DNA of 64,000 bases from Diadema antillarum (GCF_040938485.1 NW_027271213.1:744001-808000), one strand, 5' to 3'; shown: positions 1,844-42,300, counted from the first letter of the stretch. Notes: generated from the letters alone by a model not told the origin. Numbers and translations are program-made.

Positions 1844-4800
1844 GCACCTGTGAGTTCGGAGGGCGCATGTACAGTCTCGGGGACAGCTGGCACCCATTCC
1901 TCCTGCCCACCGGTCTCGACCGATGCACCACGTGCACCTGCGTCGACCACGACCACGTTACCTGCTTGCGAGACGAGTGTCCGGAGCTCGCGTGTACCGC
2001 GAAGAGGAGACTGCCCGGACACTGCTGTCCAGTTTGTGCTGGTAGGTTTTCAGGGGGAGGCAGAAGGGGGAGGGATGCTCAATCGAAAGGGAGTAATCAT
2101 TCTTGGAAGACATGCTTTCCTGGAACGAATTACGAGTTTTGAACTGATCATCAGCTTCTGTAAAAGTTTATGTACAAGCTGTCGTGTTGTTGATTTTATT
2201 CATTTATTATCATTTTCCTCGACATGACCGTCAGAGGTACCTTTATCTTTCCTTTCCTTTTGAAAAATGCATGTGATTCCTCCTGACGACCAAGCCTAAT
2301 CATTGCAATACCGTATGAACGCCACATTTCATGAGTTCCGGGAAGCAATTACATCAGAGTAGTAAAAACGAGATCACACACATCCTCACACCTCTTCCAA
2401 AATGTATTATTATGGATGTTGAGATATTACATGCCCTGTAACGCGGAAAAGTTACTTACTCAAAACGGTACGTGATCATTGTTCCTTTTTGTGCGCCAGC
2501 AATAACTGAATAAGAAAAAAAAAAGACACCACAATAAAAAAGACGATATTAGCTAAGCAACGTCGCGGTCACGTGACAAAAATATTGCATGGTGCCAATG
2601 AGACGCTATGTTGCATGACGACTGCATGTACTGACACTCAGATTATCATGACCATTGTGTCGTTAGAATGCTTTGCAAGAACGGTAAAATTCCTTTTTGT
2701 CGTCCTTTGTTTTTATTCCTTCACTCATTTCTCCTCAACGATCTACCCCCAAGATCAACTACACATCAGACACTTTTCATGTTCTTATCAATCATTATTG
2801 CGAGATATTTTGAATCCCATCAGTCCTATGAGCCAATAAATAATGAAGAAATTAGATAATGATCAGATAAACTTTCGTCACACATTATTTCATATAGGAA
2901 ATATTTAGATCACATTCCATCCCCATTGGAAATGATTTCTGCATCTGTCTTAAATCATTTCCAAATGTACAACGCAGACGATAATCTTTACCAGACGTTT
3001 TGTGATAGTGTGAAGACGTTTTGCACTGTTCCTTCTTTTCTCATATCATATGAGGCACTAAGAATGTTATGACTAACATGTCACGCTGTGGTCTGGTCTC
3101 CTATTCCATCGTTTTGATTTGGCTTGCTTTGTTTCGCTTTGTGATGTCAGGGGCATAAGAATCAACAACATTCATTTCCCTATATTGATGTCATGGTTCG
3201 TACTGAAAATTTGTCTTGAAAGAGGATGCCACTTTCACCGATGCTCCGTTGGTGGCGCCCCAGGACGGCATGTCTATCCCAGACTGCGAGTACAAGGGCA
3301 AGCGACTGCAGCACGGCGATTTATTCAGCGTGGATGACATCTTTACGTCCAGGAGGCTGGACCAATGCGTCCAGTGTGGCTGCACGGTGAGTAGGCCACG
3401 CCCACTGGTAGTAACCCTCTTTTTCAAATCATTATTTCCACGCCCATGTTCACTGAGTTTCCTCCTGATTTATGTATTACAAATTGTGTGAAAAATACGT
3501 TCAGTTTGAAAAAAAAAGAGTTATCGAAGAGGGAATAAAAAGAAACATATTGATAGAACTACTCCTTATTTCAGTTTAACATCAATTAATCGAGTAAATT
3601 GTAGCCTGACATGGTTTCTGACAACTATGATGTAAGAACTAGGTATCTATTCCGAGAATATACTCTCTAAAAAAAAATCGAGTGAAAATATTCACTTTTA
3701 AAGGAGTGAATACAAAAAAGAGTGAATTTAGAGTGAAATTGGAGTGAATTTTGAGTGAAAATGTTCATTTTCACTCATTTTGGAGTGACCTCAGGGATCA
3801 TTCGAAGATTTTGGAGTGATCCCTGAGGTCACTCCAAAACGAGTGAAAATGAACAATTTCACTCAAAATTCACTCGAAATTCACTCTTTTTTTGTATTCA
3901 CTCCTTTAAGAGTGGATATTTTCACTCGATTTTTTTTTTAGAGAGTAACGATGAATTGAAAATTCTAGCCTGCCATCTTTAAGTTGATCAAAGAACAGTT
4001 GAAACATCAGAAATTTGAAGGAACTGCGGTGGTAGACTTTTGCTTGTAATGCTTGACGCATTAGGAGATTGAGCTACAACTTGATAGATGGCACGATAAT
4101 ACCAGGAACTTTAGTCAGACAAATAATTTTGTAGAATTTGGAGCAATTTGCAAAAGAGACCAATTTTCGCGGAAGCCTATTGAAACCGCGGTAACACGGG
4201 GCTGTAACGAGAGGCGTCGTTCAACTTTCACTCGTCACTTACAATGTCACTAAGCACAACTTTCACTGGAAAGTTGGTGATCTTTAAACCGAAATCACTT
4301 CAATAAGTATTATTATGTGTTAACCCAAGCATGCTATTCAGCAGAATCTAATGATGGTGGTCCATGATGTTGTGTAGCAGCTTGCCTCGTTATAAATACT
4401 AAGAAATAGGCACGGGTTGCTTTGTATCGGAATAGCGCAGAAGCTGATTTCACAATAGTAGTGATACTTGACTTTGGGTGAGGATTGTTCTAGTATTTAT
4501 AATCATGAAAAGGGCGTTACATCTGCAACGACTTATCCTAGGCCTATCATATTTTCCAGACTAAAGGACGTACAATATGTATGTAATAATATATTAATGA
4601 AATAAAATACCTTCTCTTTTTCGTTATCTATTTTAGCTGGGAAGAATTTACTGCGCCTTAAAAACCTGCCTACCGTTGACTTGTCCGGAAAACGAACAGG
4701 TCATGTTTCCCGATTCATGCTGTCCAGTCTGTTTATATGCAGGTAACATCACATCACGCATTTTCTCCGCCCTGATTCACAGTGTCTGTTTGTGTGTGTC

Positions 4801-39370: not shown

Positions 39371-42300
39371 ATGAGAACAGGTTTGCTTCTATTACTGGTA
39401 CTGGGAGTCGTGGGCAGCTATGGGTTGAACCAGCCGGACGCAGCGGGTTTCACAGAAGCCTGGATGTCTCGTATCGCTACAGTGCTTTTCCAATGCCTGT
39501 GCCTATTTCTGGGCTTTGGAATCATGTGCATCTATGTACTCTACCAGCCCGTCCCAGCCGGTTTTCCAGAACCCTGGAAATATTGTATGTTCACCGTGCT
39601 TTTCCGGTGGTTTAGACTCAAGGTAGGTCTAATCAAGACGAAGTGCTTGTCTATCACCAGGGGCAGATCAAGGAACCCCAGCAAGCTCAAGCTTCGGTTC
39701 CTCTAGTGCCCTGGTTATGGCCCACCATTTTCTAATTTTCTTTCCAACTTTCTTGTCCCTTTCGGACTTACTACCTTCCTCGCTACCTTCCTCACTACCT
39801 TTCTCACTAATCTTTCCACCTACCTATCTTTTCTTCCCTTACAAGAGAGCTGCCTCGTCATTGTTAATGTGCGTCCTTGTTTGTGCATGTACATTGTGTG
39901 TGTTTATTGTCTGTCTTTTTTTTCTATCTCTTAAAGGCAAATTGTCCTTTTTTATTACAATTTGATTTTTTTCCCTTTTTCATGAGGGAACTGCATACTA
40001 CAAGCTCTTCTTTTTAGCGGTGCCCTCCATTTCCAGCAAAATTCTTTTGACTTTACCATAACGATATAACATTTATTTTTATCTTTGTTGCTAATTTACC
40101 TGTGTCTTTACTTTATGTTGTTATGTTCATCACATTGTTGTGCCAATTTTGTGACGTTATTACATGTGGCAAAAAAAAAAAAAAAACTGCTGAAAACTGC
40201 TTATCCAATAAGGCGAGCCAATGGAGTAAAATGGAGTCAAAAGGGGCCTGAGCTTTCGATCCTAGCAGAATCTTCGTCAGAGGCAAAATGACAAACAAGC
40301 AGGGAAAGCACTCACATATAAGGACTTCACACAAGAACAGACAGGTACAGGCTGGGTACACAGAACAAAGAAAACAAAGGAGAGGGTGGGAGTTCATGGG
40401 CAAGGAGCCCAACAGGTAAAGAGAGGGGGGATTAGAGCAGGAGGGTGGACAGACAAAGGGCAGAGGAGAGTGGACAGACAAAAGGCAGAGGAGGGTCAGT
40501 GCTCATCATGAGGATCACGGGGGCAACCAATGTAGGAAAGGGATGAATAGGGAGGCAACATCAAAGAAGATAAGGAACACCAGAGGGATAAAGAAAGGGA
40601 AAGAGTGAAAAGGACAACAGCAAGGGGAAGGGGGGGGGGTGGGGCTGAGCAACCAGTGAACCCTGAAAACCAGTGAACTCCTTTCAGGGTTCACTGGTTG
40701 CTCAGCCCCACCCCCCCCCCCCCCTTCCCCTTGCTGTTGTCCTTTTCACTCTTTCCCTTTCTTTATCCCTCTGGTGTTCCTTATCTTCTTTGATGTTGCC
40801 TCCCTATTCATCCCTTTCCTACATTGGTTGCCCCCGTGATCCTCATGATGAGCACTGACCCTCCTCTGCCTTTTGTCTGTCCACTCTCCTCTGCCCTTTG
40901 TCTGTCCACCCTCCTGCTCTAATCCCCCCTCTCTTTACCTGTTGGGCTCCTTGCCCATGAACTCCCACCCTCTCCTTTGTTTTCTTTGTTCTGTGTACCC
41001 AGCCTGTACCTGTCTGTTCTTGTGTGAAGTCCTTATATGTGAGTGCTTTCCCTGCTTGTTTGTCATTTTGCCTCTGACGAAGATTCTGCTAGGATCGAAA
41101 GCTCAGGCCCCTTTTGACTCCACGTTATTACATGCGAACATTTAATTGCATACCTAATTATTTTGTTGGATATGAAATAAATCAATTTCAGCTTAAACTT
41201 AATTGAACCGTAAAGAGGGGGCGCCTACGAAATTAAGGGGGACGGCGTACGAGCCCAACCAATTTTTCCTTTTTATTTATTTTGTTAAAAAAATAAAGAC
41301 GGGGTAGGGACGTGACCGGTGCCCGCCAACCTGGATCTGCTATTGATTAAAATGCTTCTTTACCTGTTTTTCTGACATCACTTTTGCCTGTCATTTGACG
41401 TGAAATAATGAAAGCTACATAAATCTGATACAATTATATAATTCGGGGTTAAATAGTGTAGTATTATTTCATTTCATCATGGACAACATGGCGTTAAAGA
41501 TCAGATGTATCACATCAATCATCCACCTTAAACTTTAATGTTAATTCTTCATGTCGTAGACTTCTATAAAACTGTTCATGAGACATCGCCAGAGTCCTTC
41601 GGAGCTTCAAATCTTGAAAGAGATGATGAAATCGATGCTCAACAACAAGCCGGAGCTCCCGGAAGAAGTTCCTGGCTCAAACATCAGGTCTCGTCTGACG
41701 TCATTCGGAGGCGTGAAAGTCAGAGTGTATGAGCCAAAGAACAGGGACCCGGAAGCAACTCTGCCAGCTTTGGTTTATCTCCATGGGGGCGGTCTCGTGA
41801 CAGGACACTCAGGTCAGTGTAGGTATGGGACCGTACAGTCCTTATCATTATGTAGTCAATAAACTCTCTACCAATGATTATGTTACATTTCTTACGTTCT
41901 ATCGTTGTGGAAAAAGATAGAAAGATACCCATTTCATAGCCAGCAGCAATCGTTAAATCACATGGTCATCATCTGCATCATTTTCTGGAAATGTCTATTT
42001 ATGCATATTTTTTTTCCGTTAACTCTGCAGATATGTGCGATGGAGACCTGCGCATGCTCAGTGAACGTCTGGGAGTAGCCGCAGTGGCTGTGTCGTGAGT
42101 TTCTTACGAGTTTCTTATTTTGTCAAATGTTCGAATTCATCAATGGCTTATAATACATATTTCATGCATAAAATAATTTGTGTGGGTTTCGCAATGACAC
42201 AAAGACAGTCACACACGCACACACATGCGTACATAATGTACTCACAGGTTATATAAGACACGTAAGTGAATATAATATGCACTGTAACATCAAGATAAAC

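What the first reader, a model, noticed from the sequence alone, without database searches (positions are those of the whole stretch)
40154..41134. Young Penelope-like foldback insertion carrying two mirror-image hammerhead ribozymes
Seen: a 955 bp insert bounded by a perfect 13 bp TSD, with ~440 bp near-identical inverted arms and a 13 nt loop that repeats arm sequence. There is a 65 bp one-sided extension (tggc, A17, ctgctgaaaactgc..). Each arm holds a complete minimal hammerhead: CUGACGA core, 5 bp stem II, GAAA, palindromic AGCU stem III, CUC site, 4 bp stem I. Established: Penelope-like elements and animal retrozymes carry minimal type I hammerheads that cleave as dimers, and PLEs often show inverted pLTRs. 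Inference: a recent non-autonomous ribozyme-bearing retroelement, unannotated by any ORF, possibly a new family.
Basis: partly seen in the sequence, partly recalled or inferred. Interest (0 to 1): 0.82.

Follow-up and report, generated by a model that had tools for sequence, protein, structure and literature searches.

The report
Truncated head-to-head Penelope retrotransposon insertion
The 955-bp hairpin is a very recent, dead-on-arrival double insertion of the tail end of an abundant, protein-coding Penelope-like jumping gene of a sea urchin, and its two self-cutting RNA motifs are that element's usual equipment, so it is real but ordinary.

Summary
A 955-bp insert (40167-41121) sits between perfect 13-bp direct repeats. 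Its two inverted arms are identical apart from one homopolymer length. One side carries a 65-bp extension, and each arm holds a minimal hammerhead motif.

The insertion is real. Two other contigs of the same, haplotype-redundant assembly (by protein match and assembly statistics, Diadema antillarum) carry the empty site with a single 13-mer.

It is not a new non-autonomous family:
- The arms are 98-99% identical to the last 440-500 nt of a 4,076-bp tandemly arranged Penelope-like element. That element has an intact 908-aa RT + GIY-YIG ORF and more than 2,000 candidate copies.
- The foldback junction itself occurs only once in the genome.
- The 65-bp extension is the known one-sided PLE "tail". 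Copy ends fall into two classes 56-66 nt apart, and 12 of 12 independent head-to-head insertions have exactly one of each.

The hammerhead matches the published PLE min-HHR. Helices I and II covary across several PLE families of this genome, although Rfam models miss the motif. Here the two motifs lie on opposite strands, so they cannot dimerise in cis.

The scan has reported similar head-to-head stubs elsewhere in this genome. This is a known kind of feature, of low interest.

The parts
40154..40166 (.). Left copy of the target-site duplication (ACGTTATTACATG). The last 3 nt could also be the element's terminal CAT.
   Evidence: D5. The empty allele has a single copy. Element ends read GCCACAT in most copies.
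40167..40231 (-). PLE 'tail': the distal 65 nt of the element's 3' end (GCCA, T16, then on to the TTTTACTCC end), present on this arm only.
   Evidence: It matches reference-unit positions 4021-4076 of the full-length copy in L031, where the T-run is 7 instead of 16.
40232..40668 (-). Left arm: reference-unit positions 4020 back to 3584 of the parent PLE (3' UTR / pLTR region, no coding sequence).
   Evidence: 98.6% identity to the L031 unit.
40246..40284 (-). Minimal hammerhead motif on the minus strand.
   Evidence: Exact 39-mer, 243 copies in the genome. Descriptor hit.
40669..40676 (.). 8-nt junction filler ACCAGTGA, a copy of arm sequence 18 nt away.
   Evidence: Not aligned to the parent unit. 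The parent sequence at this point differs.
40677..41121 (+). Right arm: reference-unit positions 3579-4020, ending at the proximal ('short') 3' end GACTCCA, without a tail.
41070..41108 (+). Minimal hammerhead motif on the plus strand: helix I GCCU/AGGC, core CUGACGA, an unpaired A, helix II GAUUC/GGAUC, GAAA, palindromic GC, U, and C17 at 41104.
41122..41134 (.). Right copy of the target-site duplication.
39675..40153 (.). Older interspersed repeat that was the target of the insertion. It continues at about 41135-41200.
   Evidence: Hundreds of 73-89% matches run contiguously across the site in other contigs, for example C43:115675-116221.

Best explanation
The insert is one retrotransposition product of an autonomous, endonuclease-containing Penelope-like element (PLE) of this sea-urchin genome. 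It consists of two severely 5'-truncated copies of the element's non-coding 3' end. The copies are joined head-to-head, with their 5' ends at the centre and their 3' ends outward, and the whole is flanked by a 9-13-bp target-site duplication in an AT-rich site.

The most likely mechanism is inferred, by analogy with the in vitro behaviour of the Anolis PLE:
1. The GIY-YIG endonuclease nicked both target strands about 13 bp apart.
2. Each 3'-OH primed reverse transcription of RNA from the same source copy.
3. One priming event used the distal RT start site, giving the arm with the 65-nt tail. The other used the proximal start site, giving the arm that ends at GACTCCA.
4. Both cDNAs stopped about 440 nt in. 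Their ends were joined by a template switch that left an 8-nt templated filler.

The hammerhead motifs are standard pLTR equipment of the parent element and came along as passengers. In this copy they sit on opposite strands and have no protein partner in cis. They would be locked in a roughly 440-bp dsRNA stem if the insert were transcribed. The copy is therefore almost certainly inert as a ribozyme-bearing element.
For: Insertion shown:
- Contigs C142 and C70 have 96-99% identical flanks. They hold the uninterrupted site with one 13-mer.
- An in-window paralogue at 31566-32933 is also uninterrupted.

Parent element shown:
- C728 holds a tandem array of 4,076-bp units that are 99.8-100% identical to each other.
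- The ORF has 1,801 homologues at E<=1e-20, carrying RVT_1 and GIY-YIG Pfam domains, in echinoderms, amphioxus and other animals.
- The arms are 98-99% identical to reference-unit positions 3579-4076.
- There are more than 2,200 candidate copies of the arm and 243 exact copies of the 39-nt hammerhead.

Two end classes shown:
- Copies end either at about unit 4020-4026 or at 4076-4079.
- 12 of 12 independent head-to-head insertions have one end of each class (window, C890, C1172, C729, C26, C146, C273, C472, C475, C9:3467, C9:4968, C24:1772900).
- TSDs of about 7-13 bp, mostly AT-rich, were read at nine of these twelve loci.
- If the two ends were chosen independently, P <= 0.5^12 = 2.4e-4.

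Orientation: among neighbouring opposite-strand hammerheads less than 3 kb apart in the listing, 20 are -/+ (3' ends outward) and 1 is +/-.

Single event from one source: there are zero substitutions between the arms.

Literature:
- One-sided tail and adjacent inverted 5'-truncated copies: PMC8557442.
- Both DNA strands cleaved and extended, with the tail equal to the interval between two RT start sites, and an AT-rich target: PMC11167929.
- Min-HHRs in pLTRs, and dual motifs 100-700 bp apart on opposite strands: PMC4209133.

Hammerhead fold: helices I and II are 87% paired across 21 variants, against 15-46% for slid controls. Eight of 9 pairs show compensatory changes.
Against: - No read-level confirmation. 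The public runs are kept as short, fragmented contigs, and none spans a junction or the hairpin.
- Dual priming versus single priming followed by snap-back copying of the nascent cDNA is not resolved. The near-equal arm lengths here (unit 3584 versus 3579), the identical arms and the templated filler fit snap-back at least as well.
- About 4-5 of the 12 head-to-head insertions are similarly symmetric.
- In vitro, no strand difference in start site was reported (PMC11167929), which does not predict the strict one-tail rule seen here.
- The tail is 56-66 nt here, not the published 30-40 nt.
- Rfam hammerhead models give no hit, even on a 96-nt slice.
- Self-cleavage is untested.
Confidence: 0.88

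Rival explanations
1. Same identity, different mechanism. A single target-primed cDNA started at the distal site and included the tail. It then folded back on itself at about unit 3580 and was copied (snap-back template switch). This made a near-perfect palindrome, which was resolved at the boundary of the tail.
For: The arms are identical with zero substitutions, and their inner ends lie within 5 nt of each other. The 8-nt filler is templated from the arm. About 4-5 of 12 head-to-head insertions are symmetric within 5-33 nt, far more than independent truncation would give.
Against: Most head-to-head insertions have arms of very different length, and either arm can be the longer one. Tail-less ends cluster at the same 4020-4026 position in solo insertions that have no inverted partner. 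That points to a genuine second start site rather than a resolution product.
Confidence: 0.3
2. One reading: a new non-autonomous, ribozyme-bearing retroelement family (retrozyme-like or foldback), mobilised in trans and processed by dimeric hammerheads.
For: The insert has no ORF and carries hammerhead motifs. Elsewhere in the genome, a mini-arrangement with two same-strand hammerheads 314 nt apart exists (C137, L079).
Against: The foldback centre occurs once in 1.75 Gb. The arms are just the 3' end of the autonomous element at 98-99% identity. The two motifs are on opposite strands. There is no tandem array at the locus. Inner breakpoints differ among the other head-to-head copies examined, with TSDs of their own read at nine loci.
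Confidence: 0.03
3. The palindrome is an assembly or library artefact, either a chimeric inverted read or a collapsed larger structure.
For: Palindromes are a known failure mode. No independent read spans the structure in the data I could lay. The assembly is redundant and complex.
Against: The site is a precise empty site plus a 13-bp duplication. The same architecture, with one tail, recurs at 11 other loci, and TSDs were read at eight of them. The assembly comes from HiFi reads with a mean length of about 6.8 kb, which would contain the whole 955 bp.
Confidence: 0.04
4. The insertion has been co-opted, or acts by accident, as a hairpin-RNA locus that feeds small RNAs against the PLE family.
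For: The plus-strand transcript folds into a roughly 440-bp perfect stem with MFE -947 kcal/mol. A size-fractionated RNA-type run holds family-like contigs inside the arms.
Against: There is no evidence that this copy is transcribed. The RNA-type run may contain DNA, and its contigs could come from any of more than 2,000 copies. The insertion is heterozygous and very young, so it has had no time for selection.
Confidence: 0.05

Closest known systems
Canonical EN+ Penelope-like elements (Penelope/Poseidon, Neptune, Nematis clades), as described by Evgen'ev & Arkhipova and by Craig et al. 2021 (PMC8557442)
   Same: A single ORF with RT plus a C-terminal GIY-YIG domain. Tandem units forming pLTRs. 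Heavy 5' truncation. Inverted 5'-truncated copies joined head-to-head. A one-sided tail. A hammerhead in the pLTR. AT-rich targets with TSDs of variable length.
   Different: The tail is 56-66 nt in this family rather than the 30-40 nt quoted, and it contains a T-run that varies from 7 to 22. The clade was not determined. A C-x5-C-x2-C motif in the RT-EN linker hints at Neptune or Nematis, but no tree was made.
PAc (Poseidon of Anolis carolinensis) in vitro system, Frangieh et al. 2024 (PMC11167929)
   Same: Both target strands are cleaved and extended. There are two adjacent internal RT start sites whose interval equals the genomic tail. The target is AT-rich. The hammerhead is dispensable for insertion.
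   Different: In vitro, the start site did not differ between strands. Here every head-to-head insertion examined (12/12) has exactly one long and one short end. The hammerhead here lies about 530 nt upstream of the ORF start (by unit coordinates) rather than overlapping it.
PLE minimal hammerheads (min-HHR), Cervera & de la Pena 2014 (PMC4209133)
   Same: A 4-bp helix I. The CUGAYGA core. An unpaired nucleotide between A9 and G10.1. A G10.1-C11.1 pair. GAAA. A palindromic 15.2-16.2. No helix III loop. Occurrence as opposed pairs 100-700 bp apart.
   Different: Nothing essential. Helix II is 5 bp (7-8 bp in the Schistosoma families). Activity is untested.
Animal retrozymes (Cervera & de la Pena 2020, cited in PMC8557442)
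   Same: Non-coding, with a type-I hammerhead, and presumably dependent on PLE machinery.
   Different: Retrozymes are direct tandem repeats of about 170-400 nt with same-strand ribozymes that yield circRNAs. This locus is an inverted pair of opposite-strand motifs and a genomic singleton.
L1 5'-inversions by twin priming
   Same: Use of the second nicked strand as an extra primer, giving inverted segments within one TSD-flanked insertion.
   Different: In L1 the two segments are adjacent, non-overlapping parts of one RNA. Here both arms copy the same 3'-terminal region.

Membership tests
EN+ Penelope-like element (parent family of the insert) | Single ORF with a reverse transcriptase followed by a C-terminal GIY-YIG endonuclease | tested here: met
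   The 908-aa ORF L031:1957-4683(-) has RVT_1 at E=1.4e-9. GIY-YIG scores E=3.2e-4 (21.4 bits, just under Pfam's 22.6 cut-off). The motifs are visible. Homologues carry PF00078 and PF01541.
EN+ Penelope-like element (parent family of the insert) | Tandem or partial-tandem organisation creating pseudo-LTRs | tested here: met
   C728 holds 2 full units of 4,076 bp plus at least one further partial unit, head-to-tail. Other hammerhead pairs show 4,070-4,098-bp same-strand spacing.
EN+ Penelope-like element (parent family of the insert) | 5'-truncated copies, often with an adjacent inverted copy, and a tail at only one end | tested here: met
   12 of 12 head-to-head insertions have one long and one short end. 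The window copy has the same layout.
EN+ Penelope-like element (parent family of the insert) | RT groups with PLE/telomerase RTs in a phylogeny, and assignment to a clade | not tested
   No tree was built. There is no PDB sequence hit. A linker Cys motif was seen only.
PLE minimal hammerhead ribozyme (min-HHR) | Catalytic core C3-A9 (CUGANGA), G12-A14 (GAA), A15.1-U16.1, H17 | tested here: met
   CUGACGA ... GAAA-GC-U-C at 41074-41104.
PLE minimal hammerhead ribozyme (min-HHR) | [quoted passage not shown] | tested here: met
   All three are present here and in 21 of 21 aligned variants from this genome. The criteria are taken from PMC4209133.
PLE minimal hammerhead ribozyme (min-HHR) | Helices I and II supported by covariation | tested here: met
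   87.1% of cells are paired, against 68.6% in shuffles (0 of 500 shuffles as high) and 15-46% in slid controls. Eight of 9 pairs change on both sides. Caveat: I picked the variants by hand from a pattern listing.
PLE minimal hammerhead ribozyme (min-HHR) | Match to Rfam hammerhead covariance models | tested here: not met
   No hammerhead hit at E<=10 on 2.3 kb or on a 96-nt slice, and none at gathering score in the window. Presumably this is because the motif lacks helix III and the loops; I did not inspect the Rfam models.
PLE minimal hammerhead ribozyme (min-HHR) | Self-cleavage after H17 | not testable with these tools
   Published min-HHRs cleave poorly, and only as dimers or with protein (PMC4209133, PMC11167929).
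Animal retrozyme | Direct tandem repeats of 170-400 nt with same-strand hammerheads, present as a multi-copy non-autonomous family | tested here: not met
   The motifs lie on opposite strands. There is no tandem array. The junction is unique in the genome.
Foldback / TIR DNA transposon | Terminal inverted repeats mobilised as a unit, with a TSD of fixed length | tested here: not met
   The termini are asymmetric because of the 65-nt tail. The unit is a singleton. The arms are a retroelement 3' end, and TSD length varies from about 7 to 13 bp among sister insertions.

The most novel reading that the evidence does not exclude
The strict rule seen here is that every TSD-flanked head-to-head insertion carries exactly one tailed and one tail-less 3' end (12/12), while solo copies use either end. 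This may mean that in vivo the two nicked target strands are obliged to use different RT start sites, as expected for an asymmetric or dimeric PLE ribonucleoprotein. The published in vitro system did not show such coupling. On that reading, the window copy is an unusually clean natural snapshot of a PLE integration product: zero substitutions, both junctions intact, an empty allele, and a templated filler.
Probability: 0.3. Interest if true: 0.5.

Novelty: new member of a known kind. Interest (0 to 1): 0.22.

Why it matters
As an object it is ordinary: one more truncated PLE stub, of a kind described in 2014-2024 and already met repeatedly in this genome by this scan.

Three things give it modest value:
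- It is heterozygous and mutation-free. With near-identical tandem units and an intact ORF elsewhere, this suggests the PLE family is currently or very recently active in a sea urchin of conservation interest.
- The family gives clean in vivo support for the two-start-site explanation of the PLE tail. It adds a one-tail-per-insertion rule that integration models must explain.
- Rfam hammerhead models miss this whole class, whereas a core-pattern search finds about 1,500 matches in this genome.

Tried and rejected
- Rfam. There were no hammerhead hits. The many miRNA-precursor 'hits' at 40575-40779 are generic long-hairpin matches below gathering score and mean nothing.
- Public reads. Only fragmented contigs were available, with no junction-spanning record. 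A joint 40110->41158 seen in two runs may be the empty allele, but its intervening letters are unknown, so I did not use it. RNA-type contigs inside the arms cannot be assigned to this copy.
- Tail RNA structure. The z-score is 0.18, so there is no evidence for a structured RT-initiation hairpin.
- PDB sequence search of the ORF. No hits.
- Inverted tail fragments at the 5' ends of tail-less solo copies. None were found, so the tail is not simply relocated to the other end in solo insertions.
- Tandem repeat search at the same-strand hammerhead pair in C137. There is no array. It is a mini partial tandem of PLE end fragments.
- A shared 5' end hot spot near unit 3580. The window arms and one independent solo copy (C1458/C82) share it, but none of 11 further loci do. 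This is left unexplained.
A natural genomic copy (L031) served as the coordinate reference.

Full report
**1. The observation**

The sequence at 40154-41134 is as described.
- The repeat finder reports the perfect 13-mer ACGTTATTACATG at 40154-40166 and 41122-41134. It also reports inverted arms of about 440 nt.
- A gapped alignment of the two arms shows no substitution at all. They differ only in a C-run of 10 versus 14.
- The insert is 955 bp. The A-run is 16 long, not 17.
- The left arm, read on the minus strand, runs 65 nt further than the right arm (40167-40231).
- Each arm carries the same 39-nt motif, at 41070-41108 (+) and 40246-40284 (-). It reads: helix I GCCU/AGGC, CUGACGA, an unpaired A, helix II GAUUC/GGAUC, GAAA, GC, U, and C17 at 41104.
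- A minimal-hammerhead descriptor finds only these two sites in the window and none in 200 shuffles.

**2. It is a real, very young insertion**

The window is G000:C325:744001-808000. Searching the two flanks in the same assembly finds contigs C142 and C70, with 96% and 99% identical flanks. In them the left-flank match ends, and the right-flank match begins, on the same 13 bases. Printed side by side, they show the uninterrupted site with a single 13-mer. An older paralogue inside the window (31566-32933) is also uninterrupted.

The genome can be identified from two lines of evidence.
- The element's ORF has a 99% identical NCBI protein of Diadema antillarum, on a contig of 768,985 bp. That is the length of C728.
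- The assembly statistics match a preprint describing a 1,754,675,526-bp, 2,964-scaffold HiFiasm assembly. It has 84% duplicated BUSCOs and an estimated haploid size of 0.70 Gb.

The assembly therefore keeps both haplotypes, and the insertion is most simply heterozygous in the sequenced animal. Public short-read contigs were too fragmented to add read-level proof.

**3. What the arms are**

The 440-nt arm has more than 2,200 candidate matches in the genome. The best 41 are 94-100% identical. Three matches on C728 are spaced about 4.07 kb apart on one strand. That region (L031) holds two full head-to-tail units of 4,076 bp, 99.8-100% identical to each other, flanked by a further copy that runs beyond the fetched region. 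Each full unit has a 908-aa ORF.

[quoted passage not shown] It shows the YIDD and GIY/YIG-type motifs. It has 1,801 homologues at E<=1e-20 with the same domains in echinoderms, amphioxus and other animals. This is a canonical endonuclease-containing Penelope-like element.

I used a natural unit from L031 as the coordinate reference. Against it, the left arm is unit 4072->3584 and the right arm is unit 3579->4020. Both lie downstream of the ORF stop at about unit 3175. The insert therefore contains only the 3' UTR / pLTR region.

The exact foldback centre occurs once in 1.75 Gb. The foldback is thus not itself a mobile unit or a family.

**4. The one-sided extension is the PLE tail**

In tandem arrays the sequence runs ...CAGCAG-T7-GCCA-CAT... 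straight into the next unit. Across the copies fetched, 3' ends fall into two classes.
- A short class ends at GACTCCA, about unit 4020-4026.
- A long class ends at T(n)GCCA(CAT), unit 4076-4079.

The T-run varies from 7 to 22.

Twelve independent head-to-head insertions were examined: the window, C890, C1172, C729, C26, C146, C273, C472, C475, C9:3467, C9:4968 and C24:1772900. TSDs of about 7-13 bp, mostly AT-rich, were read at nine of these twelve loci. All twelve have exactly one long and one short end. If the ends were chosen independently, the probability is at most 0.5^12 = 2.4e-4.

In the listing of a relaxed core pattern, opposite-strand neighbours within 3 kb are -/+ (3' ends outward) 20 times and +/- once.

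These features are described for PLEs.
- Inverted 5'-truncated copies and a tail at only one end are in Craig et al. 2021 (PMC8557442).
- For an Anolis element in vitro, both target strands are cleaved and extended. There are two adjacent internal RT start sites, and the tail is the interval between them (Frangieh et al. 2024, PMC11167929).

**5. How this copy most likely arose**

The following is shown:
- one TSD-flanked event;
- a single source, given the identical arms;
- both outer ends being element 3' ends, one at each start-site class;
- an inner junction with an 8-nt filler (ACCAGTGA) copied from the arm 18 nt away.

The following is inferred. The endonuclease made staggered nicks about 13 bp apart. 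Both 3'-OH ends primed reverse transcription, one at the distal and one at the proximal start site. The two cDNAs were then joined by a template switch.

A variant remains open, in which a single cDNA snaps back and is copied. It is favoured by the near-equal arm lengths here and in about 4-5 of the 12 insertions. It is disfavoured by the many asymmetric pairs. It is also disfavoured by the use of the same short end in solo copies that have no inverted partner.

**6. The hammerheads**

Rfam gives no hammerhead hit, even on a 96-nt slice. Presumably this is because the motif lacks helix III and the loops; I did not inspect the Rfam models.

The motif nevertheless meets every criterion of the published PLE min-HHR (Cervera & de la Pena 2014, PMC4209133):
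- a short helix I;
- a nucleotide between A9 and G10.1;
- a G10.1-C11.1 pair;
- a palindromic 15.2/16.2.

That paper also describes pairs 100-700 bp apart on opposite strands.

A core-only pattern finds 1,490 sites in the genome, against 17 for the reversed control. Their helix II sequences differ between families but stay complementary. On 21 variants, helices I and II are 87% paired, against 15-46% when the partners are slid. Eight of 9 pairs show changes on both sides. The motif is therefore a genuine, selected hammerhead fold of the PLEs in this genome.

In this insert the two motifs lie on opposite strands. One transcript would hold one hammerhead plus its perfect antisense. The predicted fold is a roughly 440-bp stem (-947 kcal/mol) in which the whole motif is paired.

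**7. Comparison and verdict**

The Penelope and hammerhead assignment is right. The 'non-autonomous, possibly new family' reading is not. This is a dead-on-arrival stub of an abundant autonomous PLE.

Earlier notes of this scan describe the same kind of head-to-head stubs elsewhere in this genome. I reached the same conclusion from independent tests at this locus.

Novelty: a new member of a known kind. Interest is low. Three points add some value:
- the clean heterozygous state suggests recent activity;
- the one-tail-per-insertion regularity constrains integration models;
- Rfam does not detect this ribozyme class.

Noticed in passing
window 39675-40166 and 41135-41200: The PLE landed inside an older interspersed repeat of about 560 bp. 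That repeat has more than 1,200 candidate copies at 73-89% identity, and they run uninterrupted across the insertion point in other contigs (for example C43:115675-116221). Its type was not determined.
   Followed up: partly
window 28594-28926 and 31566-32933 versus 39300-42000: A local segmental duplication at 82-90% identity lies within the window. The spacing between the two paralogous segments is about 7.7 kb on C325 but about 12.0 kb on C142 and C70. The haplotypes therefore differ by a further indel of about 4.2 kb, which is roughly the size of a full PLE unit.
   Followed up: no
G000 contigs C142:3535435-3539299 (L036) and C70:2059097-2062961 (L037): Two contigs give identical scores and coordinate offsets against the window flanks, so the locus is present at least three times in the assembly. 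This fits the reported 84% duplicated BUSCOs and a haploid estimate of 0.70 Gb against 1.75 Gb assembled.
   Followed up: partly
L079 (G000:C137:596852-597260); the same 314-nt spacing occurs at C447:639431/639745: A mini partial tandem of PLE end fragments (unit 3923-4076, then 1-135, then 3918-4020). It has two same-strand hammerheads 314 nt apart, which is a retrozyme-like layout. It appears to be a single locus plus its haplotype copy.
   Followed up: partly
L015 / L018 (G000:C1458:60823-61254 and C82:1953274-1953704): An independent solo copy starts at unit 3582-3583, within 5 nt of the inner ends of both window arms (3584 and 3579). These ends lie about 25 nt beyond a C-rich homopolymer. 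This could be an RT stop or an RNA 5' end, but it was not seen in 11 further loci.
   Followed up: partly
L031:1401-1988 (-): A 195-aa ORF overlaps the end of the RT-EN ORF by 32 nt and runs about 150 nt into the region that forms the arms. It has no Pfam match and may be spurious.
   Followed up: partly
L076 (C10:1273540-1275290) and L077 (C24:508800-510990): Two complex PLE structures have one arm ending at unit 4004, 2 nt past the predicted hammerhead cleavage site, instead of at either usual end class.
   Followed up: no
window 40575-40779: The foldback centre produces dozens of sub-threshold Rfam miRNA-precursor matches (for example MIR1858 at 115 bits against a gathering score of 137). 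These are a generic long-hairpin artefact that could mislead automated annotation.
   Followed up: yes
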